From positions 3,782,001 to 3,846,000 of the forward strand of contig NC_047080.1 of assembly GCF_902459465.1 (NCBI RefSeq): a stretch of DNA of 64,000 nt, written 5' to 3'. Position 1 is the stretch's first letter. Every line of letters begins with the position of its first letter. The position numbers were made by a program, and so were the translations under genes. Under the pieces are notes generated by a model. The model ran no database searches and was not told the DNA's origin. It worked only from the letters and a program-made list of their open reading frames with translations. Positions 57,887 to 59,919 of the stretch are shown piece by piece. The DNA comes from Asterias rubens. Lineage: Eukaryota.

Positions 57887-59919
57887 ATGGCATCCGCCTG
57901 GTTGTGTTTTGCTCTTTGTATCACTGCAGTTATCGTGACGGTGGCGGCTGCGACAGGAGAAGAGACTATCTGGCTAACCTCTGACCTCGAAGATTCCACT
58001 ACATTAGCCTACGATACACAAAGCTACTCAGATCCAGCCCCAAACTCTAATTTCCTGAACGAGCTGAACGAGAAGTTGTTAAAACAGGGGGACTCGGTTC
58101 TCAAATCCATGCAGGCATATTTGTGACCCGCTCTAACGAAATGAGGAATGTCTAGTGAATTTCACATTTGCATATTTCATAATATTCCAAACAAGCAAAT
58201 CTTAATATTTTAAATGAAATAAAAATCAAGATCATACGACCTTCCTGTCTGAACCAATGTGGAATTTTCGACGCCCTTGACGCTTAATTTTACGACCCGT
58301 TTTGGAAAACACAAACTCCATAAAAATTAATTTGAAAAAACGCGACGTCTCACACACTCATTAAAATAATATTAATATTTTTGTTTACGATAATGAAAAC
58401 ATCAATTTTTAACCCCCCGTAGTCAGGCAAACAAAATTACCAAAATGAACAAACAACTCAACGAGAAGTTAGATTATAATGTGTAGACAATTTCACCAAT
58501 AAGTTTGACAATGTTTACCTGAAATTTTAGAGCAATTTGCGTTGATATTTCCAACTTGAAATGCGAGTTTTGTTCCGTCAAGTCAAAACATTGTAAAGAC
58601 AGCTGTCACTCAGCGCATAGCATCAATCCCCACGGGTATACTCGGCTTGAAGACCCGGGAACATTCGCAATTTCCCCGTGCATGTTTCTCATGATTTTAG
58701 CGAAATTTCTTACCCAGCATGAAGTTTAACTGAAAGATTATTCCTTTAACATTCAGAATTATTTTGGTTTGGAACAATTCAACCTTGAAAAACCACAAAA
58801 CAATGATGGAAATTAGACACTGTTTTCCCAACGTTCGATAAACATTCCACTGTTCCATACGTCGTACGTGTAGCAAAGTTTGTGCATGGTACCCGCGCAG
58901 TCTTCGTGTGTACATTGTCGTATTACCAGCGCTGCAACTAGCTATGGCAACAAGACCGGGTCGGGTGATCGGACTCTCACGCTGCATGGATAAACAACGC
59001 CTCGGTCTGTGAGCCATACTAAATCTCGCGACGCGGATTTATGAATGGGAGATGTCATCGCTGATAAAACAGGGTTTGCCTTTGGTGACCTTTGAACCCC
59101 TTTCAGTGTTGACACATGTTTTTGGTGGCTATATTTAGACACCTCTAATCTTTGGCTTTCCAATGGTACTCTTGGTGGCGCTATGCAAGTTGTGTGAAAA
59201 GTTTTGCGACGCTCGCCAAATTTGGTGTTTTCAATGAATGTTCGCTGTCTGTCCCGTGGGATTTGGAACATTTTTGGATAATTACGTCAAGAACATGGCT
59301 CAGAAATCGTCTGTTTTTACATCTTTAGTAATCTTTTGACGAAAAGGTAAGACCATTGTAAGTTTAATCAAGATTTAGGCAACCTAAAAGTGTAGTAATA
59401 AAAAAATTCAAAAATTCAATAATTTTCATTAATTGTTTGTTATGATTATGTTCGGTGTCAAATTACACGAAATGAAACTTTACTAGACATTCCTCATTTC
59501 GTTGGAGCGGGTCACATTTGATGAAGTTTCAGCAACTGGTTTCAGCCGGTTCCAACCCGCAAGAACCGGTTCCCACCACCGGCGAAGCTGGCATCAGGCG
59601 CACGCTAACTGGTGGTGGTGCTACTACAACACCAGATGGTGACCCATCAGAGAAGCGCAGCAGCACCCCACCCATCAGCAAGGACGACATTCTCCGAGAG
59701 ATCATCCGGAGGATACGGGAGGAGGCTGCAGGGTATCCCCTCGAGCTGCCACTCGGTATGAGGTTCATCGAGCAACCACTAGGCACGACTCTCCAGACGT
59801 ACCACAGTGATAGCCCGGAGAAGCGAGACGCTGATCGGGATGCGGTACGAGATGAAATCTTGAGAAGGCTCTTGGAGCTTCAAAGAAGTAGGCTTCCCGG
59901 TATGCGTGCCGGAAAATAA
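57887..59919 (+). CDS. Putative secreted neuropeptide precursor (orphan), about 204 aa in two coding exons; splice junction uncertain
   Basis: The exon starting at 57862 (acceptor ttctatag) encodes a signal peptide (MASAWLCFALCITAVIVTVAAA) and an acidic spacer. The GC-rich ORF 59533-59919 has two EKR cleavage sites and ends ...LPGMRA-GK-stop. The join needs either a GC donor at 58115 or a weak GT donor at 58123. Confidence 0.75.

What the first reader, a model, noticed from the sequence alone, without database searches (positions are those of the whole stretch)
59533..59919. Ancient internal duplication inside the precursor: two paralogous peptides, only one amidated
Seen: both units follow the same pattern. 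Unit 1 is DPSEKR...DDILREIIRRIR...LPLGMRF. Unit 2 is DSPEKR...DEILRRLLELQR...LPGMRA. Unit 2 ends in GK-stop, whereas in unit 1 GMRF is followed by IEQ with no amidation signal. Inference: the shared D[DE]ILR helix and LP(L)GMRx end are the bioactive core, and unit 1 either lost processing or diverged. The ancestral peptide may have ended in MRF-amide, which would hint at an RFamide link.
Basis: partly seen in the sequence, partly recalled or inferred. Interest (0 to 1): 0.7.

Follow-up and report, generated by a model that had tools for sequence, protein, structure and literature searches.

The report
Two-peptide starfish nerve prohormone, duplicated internally
The stretch is the peptide-bearing end of an unnamed starfish gene, active in nerve in a relative, whose two hormone-like peptides arose by an old internal duplication; both are kept by selection but only the last can be amidated, and nothing supports a link to RFamide peptides.

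Summary
Observation confirmed. The window is Asterias rubens and the stretch is the 3' coding part of LOC117303332, a 211-aa 'uncharacterized' protein.

- **Architecture.** Signal peptide, pro-region, EKR, unit 1 (…ELPLGMRF), a variable linker, EKR, unit 2 (…LPGMRA-GK-stop).
- **Orthologs.** A. amurensis, Acanthaster planci and Patiria miniata keep both units and both EKR sites.
- **Duplication.** A profile of unit 1 matches a profile of unit 2 (hhalign 95%, E 3.7e-8), while the pro-region control gives E 0.25-0.88. Shared motifs use different synonymous codons, so the duplication is old and predates the Forcipulatida/Valvatida split.
- **Unit 1 is not a relic.** It is the most constrained part (dN/dS 0.07; unit 2 0.21; linker 0.83).
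- **No RFamide link.** No ortholog has Gly after MRF. Patiria has GMRF-KK, which allows cleavage but not amidation.
- **Nerve product.** The Acanthaster ortholog is secreted, nerve-enriched and was detected by mass spectrometry in radial nerve cord.
- **Family.** No membership in the PDF, CRH or any Pfam family was detectable. I found it only in starfish.
- **Side finding.** The annotated 'AT-AC intron' splitting this coding sequence is a very young 1393-bp transposon with an ATTT target duplication.

The scan noted this same stretch before; I found no paper naming the family.

The parts
55098..55263 (+). Exon 1 (5' UTR) of LOC117303332, joined to 57860 across a GT..AG intron
   Evidence: Spliced RNA contigs in runs X5 and X9, plus raw reads in X10 (tables 5 and 8).
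57860..58122 (+). Start of the coding exon: ATG at 57887, signal peptide about 57887-57955 (MASAWLCFALCITAVIVTVAAAT), then the pro-region. The last 4 bases (58119-58122, ATTT) are the left copy of the target-site duplication.
   Evidence: SignalP = Y for the Acanthaster ortholog (PMC9971248 Table S1).
58123..59515 (.). 1393-bp non-autonomous DNA transposon inserted in the coding sequence. It has terminal inverted repeats of about 40 bp and is flanked by a 4-bp ATTT target duplication. NCBI models it as an AT-AC intron.
   Evidence: Inverted repeat 58122-58162 / 59476-59516, 93% complementary. At least 40 full-length copies at 96-100% identity in the genome. Other copies carry ATTT or AATT duplications and no ORF exceeds 114 aa. 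The site is empty in A. amurensis, A. planci and P. miniata.
59516..59649 (+). Coding sequence resumes (…AY-LMKFQQLVSAGS…): end of the conserved pro-region helix and a variable Thr/Gly-rich spacer.
59650..59658 (+). First EKR processing site (residues 123-125), invariant in all four species.
59659..59766 (+). Unit 1 core, residues 126-161: SSTPPISKDDILREIIRRIREEAAGYPLELPLGMRF. No Gly or basic site follows it in Asterias.
   Evidence: dN/dS 0.07 between Acanthaster and Patiria.
59767..59817 (+). Linker, residues 162-178 (IEQPLGTTLQTYHSDSP). Not conserved; begins with KK in Patiria.
   Evidence: dN/dS 0.83.
59818..59826 (+). Second EKR processing site (residues 179-181).
59827..59910 (+). Unit 2, residues 182-209: DADRDAVRDEILRRLLELQRSRLPGMRA, the predicted 28-residue peptide.
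   Evidence: dN/dS 0.21.
59911..59919 (+). Gly-Lys-stop: the amidation signal for unit 2, invariant in all four species.
59920..60236 (+). 3' UTR. It runs on to about 60790 in one contig.
   Evidence: table 8.

Best explanation
The stretch is the peptide-encoding end of a secreted prohormone, known so far only from starfish and nerve-expressed in the one relative measured.

Before the crown starfish orders split, an internal tandem duplication produced two paralogous units. Each has an invariant EKR cleavage site, about 8 variable residues, an Arg-rich predicted helix ((R/D)EI(I/L/M)RR(I/L)...) and a proline-bracketed tail, (P-V/L)-E-L-P-(x)-G-(M/I)-R-x.

- **Unit 2** sits at the extreme C-terminus and always ends in Gly-Lys-stop. 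After prohormone convertase, carboxypeptidase and PAM processing it should be an amidated peptide of 28 residues (Asterias) or 36 residues (valvatids), ending ...LPGMR(A/G)-NH2.
- **Unit 1** is retained under even stronger purifying selection but never has a Gly. It should be released with a free-acid end: ...GMRF-OH after KK in Patiria, or with a non-conserved C-terminal extension running to the next EKR in Asterias and Acanthaster.

Shown: the sequence architecture, its conservation, the selection pattern, transcription, and nerve enrichment plus mass-spectrometric detection of the ortholog. Inferred: the actual cleavage and amidation, bioactivity, and action through an unidentified receptor.
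For: **Gene and orthologs.** LOC117303332 and orthologs in A. amurensis, A. planci and P. miniata.

**Duplication.** hhalign U1 profile against U2 profile: probability 95%, E 3.7e-8. The same-protein helical pro-region control gives E 0.25-0.88. Shuffle z-scores are 7.6-9.5 in valvatids. Orthologous units are far more alike than paralogous ones: Arub U1-Apla U1 scores 78 against 33 for Arub U1-U2. Shared motifs use different synonymous codons, which argues against recent gene conversion.

**Selection.** dN/dS is 0.07 for U1, 0.21 for U2, 0.83 for the linker and 0.55 for the pro-region. EKR, EKR and GK are invariant.

**Expression.** Spliced transcripts appear in three runs. The Acanthaster ortholog oki.27.137 has SignalP = Y and was detected by LC-MS/MS in soluble radial nerve cord extract. 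Its TPM values are 167 and 602 in nerve against 11 or less elsewhere (PMC9971248 Table S1).

**Weak lead.** Protein-language-model neighbours are neuropeptide precursors at scores of 0.82-0.87.
Against: - No mature peptide has been shown. The mass-spectrometry record does not say which peptides matched.
- Internal RR pairs in both helices could be cleaved and give shorter products.
- Tissue expression in A. rubens itself was not measured, and the gene is absent from the 40 precursors of Semmens et al. 2016.
- The AlphaFold model has low confidence (pLDDT 39), so 'helix' rests on a weak prediction.
- Only four species from two lineages are available.
Confidence: 0.75

Rival explanations
1. Unit 1 is a decaying or unprocessed relic of the duplication, and only unit 2 is functional.
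For: Unit 1 has no Gly. In Asterias and Acanthaster it also has no basic site after MRF.
Against: The unit 1 core is the most constrained segment (dN/dS 0.07, with 19 of 44 columns invariant). Constraint stops exactly at ...RF. Patiria has KK right after MRF, and the upstream EKR is invariant.
Confidence: 0.08
2. The ancestral unit ended in MRF-amide and the family is a divergent RFamide-type (FMRFamide-like) peptide family.
For: Only the ...GMRF / ...GIRF tripeptide end of unit 1.
Against: None of the four orthologs has G-[KR] after RF. At that position unit 2 has A or G. Peptides of 28-36 predicted-helical residues are unlike short RFamides. There is no FARP or other Pfam hit.
Confidence: 0.04
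3. The family is a fast-evolving starfish branch of a bilaterian family of helical amidated peptides (CRH/DH44-type or PDF-type).
For: - Length, predicted helix, C-terminal amide and a GK-stop position like CRH-type precursors.
- Two peptides per precursor, as in ArPDFP.
- Unit 2 resembles the ArCRHP pro-region RRLSRQQILRRLND (Smith-Waterman z 5.6; hhalign E 0.036).
Against: - There are no Pfam CRF or Pigment_DH hits on the proteins or at the locus.
- hhalign probability is 0.07% against ArCRH and 0.13% against ArPDF2.
- The ArCRHP match covers 14-16 Arg/Leu-rich helical columns at 1.4% probability, and the valvatid unit 2 does not show it.
- A. rubens already has both a CRH-type and a PDF-type gene elsewhere.
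Confidence: 0.07
4. It is a secreted neural protein of another kind (a granin-like sorting protein, or a cationic antimicrobial peptide precursor) rather than a signalling-peptide precursor.
For: There is no known receptor. The units are Arg-rich. The pro-region helix is conserved but has no flanking cleavage sites. Smith et al. 2023 list the protein only as uncharacterised.
Against: Islands of strong constraint are bounded by invariant EKR sites and a conserved GK end, with neutral spacers between them. This is the typical pattern of neuropeptide precursors. Expression is strongly nerve-enriched.
Confidence: 0.1
5. The unit 1 / unit 2 resemblance is compositional chance between two Arg-rich helices.
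For: The Asterias peptide-only score is modest (z 2.7).
Against: The profile comparison gives E 3.7e-8 with a negative control. Both units share the non-helical PVELPxGxR tail in the same order and register. Valvatid z-scores are 7.6-9.5.
Confidence: 0.03

Closest known systems
Orphan echinoderm precursors with two paralogous peptides sharing a C-terminal motif (Arnp21, Arnp22, Arnp23 of Asterias rubens; Semmens et al. 2016, PMC4772807)
   Same: Signal peptide, acidic or variable spacers, dibasic sites, and two internally duplicated peptides of about 20-35 residues that share an end motif. No relatives are known outside echinoderms.
   Different: The sequences are unrelated. There are no cysteines here. 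One unit is amidated and the other is not. This 211-residue precursor is not among the 40 listed there.
ArPDFP, the A. rubens PDF-type precursor (KT601709)
   Same: Two peptides of about 30-35 residues in one precursor, only one of them amidated.
   Different: In ArPDFP the first peptide is the amidated one, and its two peptides lie on separate exons. No sequence relationship is detectable (hhalign 0.13%). The Pigment_DH HMM does not hit this locus.
CRH-type precursors (ArCRHP, KT601710; Pfam CRF PF00473)
   Same: A long, predicted-helical amidated peptide at the extreme C-terminus of the precursor. There is a weak resemblance between unit 2 and the ArCRHP pro-region.
   Different: No CRF HMM hit and no similarity to the ArCRH peptide itself. 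This gene has two units, whereas CRH-type precursors have one peptide.
RFamide / FMRFamide-related peptides
   Same: Unit 1 ends in ...MRF or ...IRF.
   Different: No amidation signal in any ortholog, a much longer peptide, and no FARP Pfam hit.

Membership tests
Neuropeptide / prohormone precursor (generic class) | N-terminal signal peptide | tested here: met
   All four orthologs have a hydrophobic N-terminus. SignalP = Y and 0 transmembrane segments for the Acanthaster ortholog in PMC9971248 Table S1. SignalP was not run here.
Neuropeptide / prohormone precursor (generic class) | Conserved basic cleavage sites flanking conserved peptides, with unconstrained spacers | tested here: met
   Both EKR sites are invariant. 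dN/dS is 0.07 and 0.21 in the units against 0.83 in the linker.
Neuropeptide / prohormone precursor (generic class) | C-terminal Gly as amide donor | tested here: met
   Unit 2 has GK-stop in all four species. Unit 1 has no Gly in any of them.
Neuropeptide / prohormone precursor (generic class) | Expression in the nervous system and a detectable product | tested here: inconclusive
   The Acanthaster ortholog reaches TPM 167-602 in radial nerve against 11 or less elsewhere, and the protein was detected by LC-MS/MS in nerve extract. In Asterias only transcription is shown, in runs of unknown tissue. The mature peptides are not identified.
Neuropeptide / prohormone precursor (generic class) | Cognate receptor and bioactivity | not testable with these tools
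   Needs synthetic peptides and receptor assays.
RFamide peptides | C-terminal Arg-Phe followed by Gly and a basic residue, giving RF-NH2 | tested here: not met
   MRF-IEQ (two Asterias species), IRF-FQN (Acanthaster) and MRF-KK (Patiria).
PDF-type peptides (Pfam PF06324) | Match to the Pigment_DH profile or to echinoderm PDF-type peptides | tested here: not met
   No Pfam hit at E up to 10. The genome-wide PF06324 search does not hit this locus. hhalign against ArPDF2 gives 0.13%. Smith-Waterman against ArPDF1 and ArPDF2 gives z of 2.6 or less.
CRH/urocortin/DH44-type peptides (Pfam PF00473) | Match to the CRF profile or to ArCRH | tested here: not met
   No Pfam hit. The PF00473 own-genome search found nothing anywhere, so it is uninformative. 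hhalign against ArCRH gives 0.07%. The only match is a 14-16 column stretch of the ArCRHP pro-region at E 0.036.

The most novel reading that the evidence does not exclude
The two peptides are the ligands of a still-orphan starfish receptor, and the family is the highly diverged asteroid branch of an ancient bilaterian family of helical amidated peptides (the CRH/DH44- or PDF-like ligands of secretin-type receptors). On this reading the weak resemblance between unit 2 and the pro-region of the starfish CRH-type precursor would be a trace of common origin.
Probability: 0.07. Interest if true: 0.7.

Novelty: new member of a known kind. Interest (0 to 1): 0.4.

Why it matters
Asterias rubens is the main echinoderm model for neuropeptide biology. 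Its published catalogue of 40 precursors does not contain this gene, and the databases call it 'uncharacterized'.

The data here turn it into a concrete candidate that can be tested directly:
- two predicted peptides with defined ends;
- evidence that both are under selection;
- nerve-specific expression and mass-spectrometric detection in a relative.

It also gives a clean natural example of duplicated peptides in one precursor that differ in C-terminal chemistry, amide against free acid. That is useful for asking what amidation contributes.

The architecture itself is ordinary for neuropeptide precursors, and the RFamide idea that made the finding look special is not supported.

The side finding matters for annotation quality and for transposon biology in this genome: a very young, apparently active transposon sits in the coding sequence and was annotated as an AT-AC intron.

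Tried and rejected
- **Pfam scan of all four orthologs at E up to 10.** Only noise appeared (CA109-like, DUF5908).
- **Exhaustive phmmer against 1.84 billion representatives.** Only A. amurensis and Acanthaster were found.
- **Word-indexed searches.** A profile search added Patiria only. A region-focused search with the Patiria units added nothing. So there is no detectable relative outside Asteroidea, within the limits of these tools.
- **Own-genome protein search.** No paralog was found.
- **CRF and Pigment_DH profiles against the genome.** Neither hits the locus. The one over-threshold Pigment_DH hit (L003) lies in a short ORF with no signal peptide or amidation signal, and its E-value is 0.17 genome-wide. 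I judge it a chance match.
- **A third, cryptic copy of the unit in the pro-region.** Rejected (hhalign E 0.25-0.88).
- **U12-type intron reading of the AT..AC junction.** Rejected. The 5' end ATTTGTGA does not fit the U12 consensus, and the segment is a transposon with a target-site duplication.
- **Literature string searches.** Searches for the peptides and gene IDs found nothing except the Acanthaster proteome table.
- **Smith et al. 2017 (COTS neuropeptidome, ApNp26-35).** I could not read it, so I cannot exclude that the Acanthaster ortholog already has an ApNp name.
- **AlphaFold model.** Too low in confidence (pLDDT 39) to be worth a fold search.

Full report
**What the sequence is.**
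A protein search identifies the stretch as the C-terminal 128 residues of 'uncharacterized protein LOC117303332' of Asterias rubens (P0001, 211 aa). A 95%-identical protein exists in A. amurensis (P0002). The window is G000:C20:3782001-3846000.

**Gene model.**
RNA contigs from three runs give the following structure:
- a 5' UTR exon at 55098-55263;
- a GT..AG intron;
- coding sequence from 57860 (ATG at 57887) to 58118, joined to 59516 and onward;
- a stop codon at 59917-59919 and a 3' UTR reaching at least 60236.

The coding sequence continues upstream to 59516.

**Orthologs.**
An exhaustive phmmer search found one more relative, Acanthaster planci XP_022085214 / LOC110976338 (P0003, E 3e-6). 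A profile search added Patiria miniata LOC119734526 (P0004). Nothing outside starfish was found, and a region-focused search added nothing. No paralog exists in the A. rubens genome.

All four proteins share one plan:
- signal peptide;
- a pro-region with a conserved helix;
- an invariant EKR;
- unit 1, ending in P(L/V)ELP(L/I)G(M/I)RF;
- a variable linker;
- an invariant EKR;
- unit 2, ending in LPGMR(A/G)-GK-stop.

**Is the duplication real?**
- In Asterias alone the Smith-Waterman score of the two units with their EKR flanks is 44, against 21.3 +/- 4.2 for shuffles. Two of 5000 shuffles reach it.
- In the valvatids both units carry (Q/E)PVELP-x-G-x-R, and the scores are far stronger: z = 9.5 in Patiria and 7.6 in Acanthaster.
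- A four-species profile of unit 1 matches a profile of unit 2 with hhalign probability 95%, E 3.7e-8, over 38 columns.
- As a control, the helical pro-region of the same proteins gives E 0.88 and 0.25 against the two units.
- Orthologous units are much more alike than paralogous ones. Arub U1-Apla U1 scores 78 against 33 for Arub U1-U2, and Apla U1-Pmin U1 scores 164 against 51 for Apla U1-U2.

The duplication therefore predates the split of Forcipulatida (Asterias) and Valvatida (Acanthaster, Patiria). From general knowledge that split is on the order of 200 million years old; I did not test the date here.

The shared motifs use different synonymous codons. In Acanthaster, for example, PVELP is CCG GTG GAG TTG CCT in one unit and CCT GTA GAA CTC CCA in the other. 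The similarity is therefore held by selection on the protein, not by recent gene conversion.

**Which parts are under selection?**
Nei-Gojobori estimates between Acanthaster and Patiria:

| Segment | dN/dS |
|---|---|
| EKR + unit 1 core | about 0.07 |
| EKR + unit 2 | about 0.21 |
| Linker | about 0.83 |
| Pro-region | about 0.55 |

Constraint ends exactly at ...RF. This is the classic neuropeptide-precursor pattern of conserved peptides and free spacers. It contradicts the reading that unit 1 has decayed, because unit 1 is the most conserved part of the protein.

**Amidation and the RFamide idea.**
Unit 2 has Gly-Lys-stop in all four species. Standard processing (convertase, carboxypeptidase, PAM) is established biochemistry that I infer for this protein rather than show. 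It predicts ...LPGMRA-NH2 of 28 residues in Asterias and ...ELPGMRG-NH2 of 36 residues in the valvatids.

After the RF of unit 1 come IEQ (both Asterias species), FQN (Acanthaster) and KK (Patiria). No species has a Gly there. Patiria has a dibasic site that would release ...PIGMRF with a free carboxyl end. The RFamide link has no support beyond a tripeptide.

**Is it a neuropeptide precursor?**
The Acanthaster ortholog appears as oki.27.137 in Table S1 of Smith et al. 2023 (PMC9971248). That table lists soluble proteins identified by RP-HPLC and mass spectrometry in adult radial nerve cord. Its entry reads:
- SignalP Y, no transmembrane segment, no sea-urchin hit;
- TPM 167 in female nerve and 602 in male nerve;
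- TPM 11 in mouth, 3 in podia, 2.5 in spine, and less than 1 in the other tissues listed.

The table's annotation columns give only the BLAST name 'Uncharacterized protein', with no sea-urchin hit, GO term or Pfam domain.

Protein-language-model neighbours of P0001 are assorted neuropeptide precursors at scores of 0.82-0.87, which is a lead only. AlphaFold predicts helices at residues 133-148 and 178-202, but with pLDDT of about 39.

The gene is not among the 40 precursors of Semmens et al. 2016. Its peptide strings and gene IDs occur in no other searchable paper. I could not read Smith et al. 2017, which named ApNp26-35, so a prior name for the Acanthaster gene cannot be excluded.

**Family assignment.**
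There are no Pfam hits. I located the A. rubens PDF-type and CRH-type genes in the genome, using sequences from the Semmens supplement, and compared them with the units:
- hhalign of the unit 2 profile against ArPDF2 gives 0.13% probability;
- against ArCRH it gives 0.07%;
- the one suggestive signal is a 14-16 column match of both units to RRLSRQQILRRLNDLA in the ArCRHP pro-region.

That last match has hhalign E 0.036 at 1.4% probability, and Smith-Waterman z 5.6 for Asterias unit 2, but it is absent for the valvatid unit 2. I treat it as Arg/Leu-helix resemblance and leave it as a low-probability lead. The family remains an orphan.

**Side finding: the 'intron' is a transposon.**
The junction 58118|59516 has AT..AC ends and a 5-base ambiguity, and no GT-AG reading is possible.
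- The skipped segment is a 1393-bp element (58123-59515) with inverted ends of about 40 bp.
- It is flanked by ATTT on both sides, and no ORF inside it exceeds 114 aa.
- The genome holds at least 40 full-length copies at 96-100% identity, and other copies are likewise flanked by ATTT or AATT.
- A. amurensis, Acanthaster and Patiria have an uninterrupted single-exon coding sequence. The A. amurensis sequence is exactly the empty site.
- The mRNA junction equals the empty site.
- One run (X9) shows the site with three extra bases (ATT+ATTT), which looks like an excision footprint.
- The filled junction was found only in DNA runs of the probable source sample, but that search rested on just 3 sampled words.

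Most likely the reference haplotype carries a very recent, polymorphic insertion. Read straight through it would give ...AYL-stop, and the annotation absorbed it as an AT-AC intron. True removal at the RNA level is the less likely alternative; my rough estimate for it is about 15%.

**Verdict.**
The 'unit 1 degenerated' and 'RFamide' inferences are not supported. This is a new, apparently unnamed member of a familiar kind: an orphan, lineage-restricted neuropeptide-type precursor with two paralogous peptides.

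Noticed in passing
window 58119-59519: The annotated AT-AC 'intron' in the coding sequence is a 1393-bp non-autonomous DNA transposon. It has inverted ends of about 40 bp and a 4-bp ATTT target duplication. The genome holds at least 40 near-identical copies. The site is empty in A. amurensis, Acanthaster and Patiria, and in the mRNA. It is probably a recent, polymorphic insertion allele in the reference haplotype; read through, it gives ...AYL-TGA.
   Followed up: yes
window 58121 | 59516 (run X9): One RNA contig joins 58121 to 59516, which is 3 bases more than the empty site (GCATATT+ATTTGATG, adding one Tyr in frame). 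This looks like a transposon excision footprint, or else a 3-bp indel allele exactly at the insertion site.
   Followed up: partly
window 58046-58118 and 59516-59547 (residues ~54-88): A conserved predicted helix in the pro-region (…G(D/R)S(V/M)…Q..L…, with G68, S70, Q76 and L79 invariant). It has no flanking basic sites and is unrelated to the two units (hhalign E 0.25-0.88). Its function is unknown.
   Followed up: partly
L010:1495-1545 (ArCRHP gene, G000:C33): [quoted passage not shown] It may be chance between Arg/Leu helices.
   Followed up: partly
L003:1471-1590 (-) = G000:C19 about 160955-161002: A short ORF reads …NPTLINSLFNLPKHMNSV…. It scores above the Pfam Pigment_DH cut-off (21.7 bits; genome-wide E 0.17). 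It has no signal peptide or amidation signal, so it is probably a chance or repeat-borne match and not the ArPDFP gene, which lies on C23.
   Followed up: partly
window 56576-56772, 57561-57757, 60713-60900: Very high summed contig depth in all RNA runs, up to about 6e5 at 60713-60900, with many loose ends. These are presumably abundant transcribed repeats in intron 1 and downstream of the gene.
   Followed up: no
window 62076-62180 (+); L011:6013-6624; L013:5857-6633: The next gene downstream on the same strand starts at about 62076 (MNHDHM…, 97% identical to the A. amurensis neighbour). In Acanthaster the gene about 2.4 kb downstream of the ortholog is a Ctr copper transporter (PF04145). This hints at conserved microsynteny.
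   Followed up: partly
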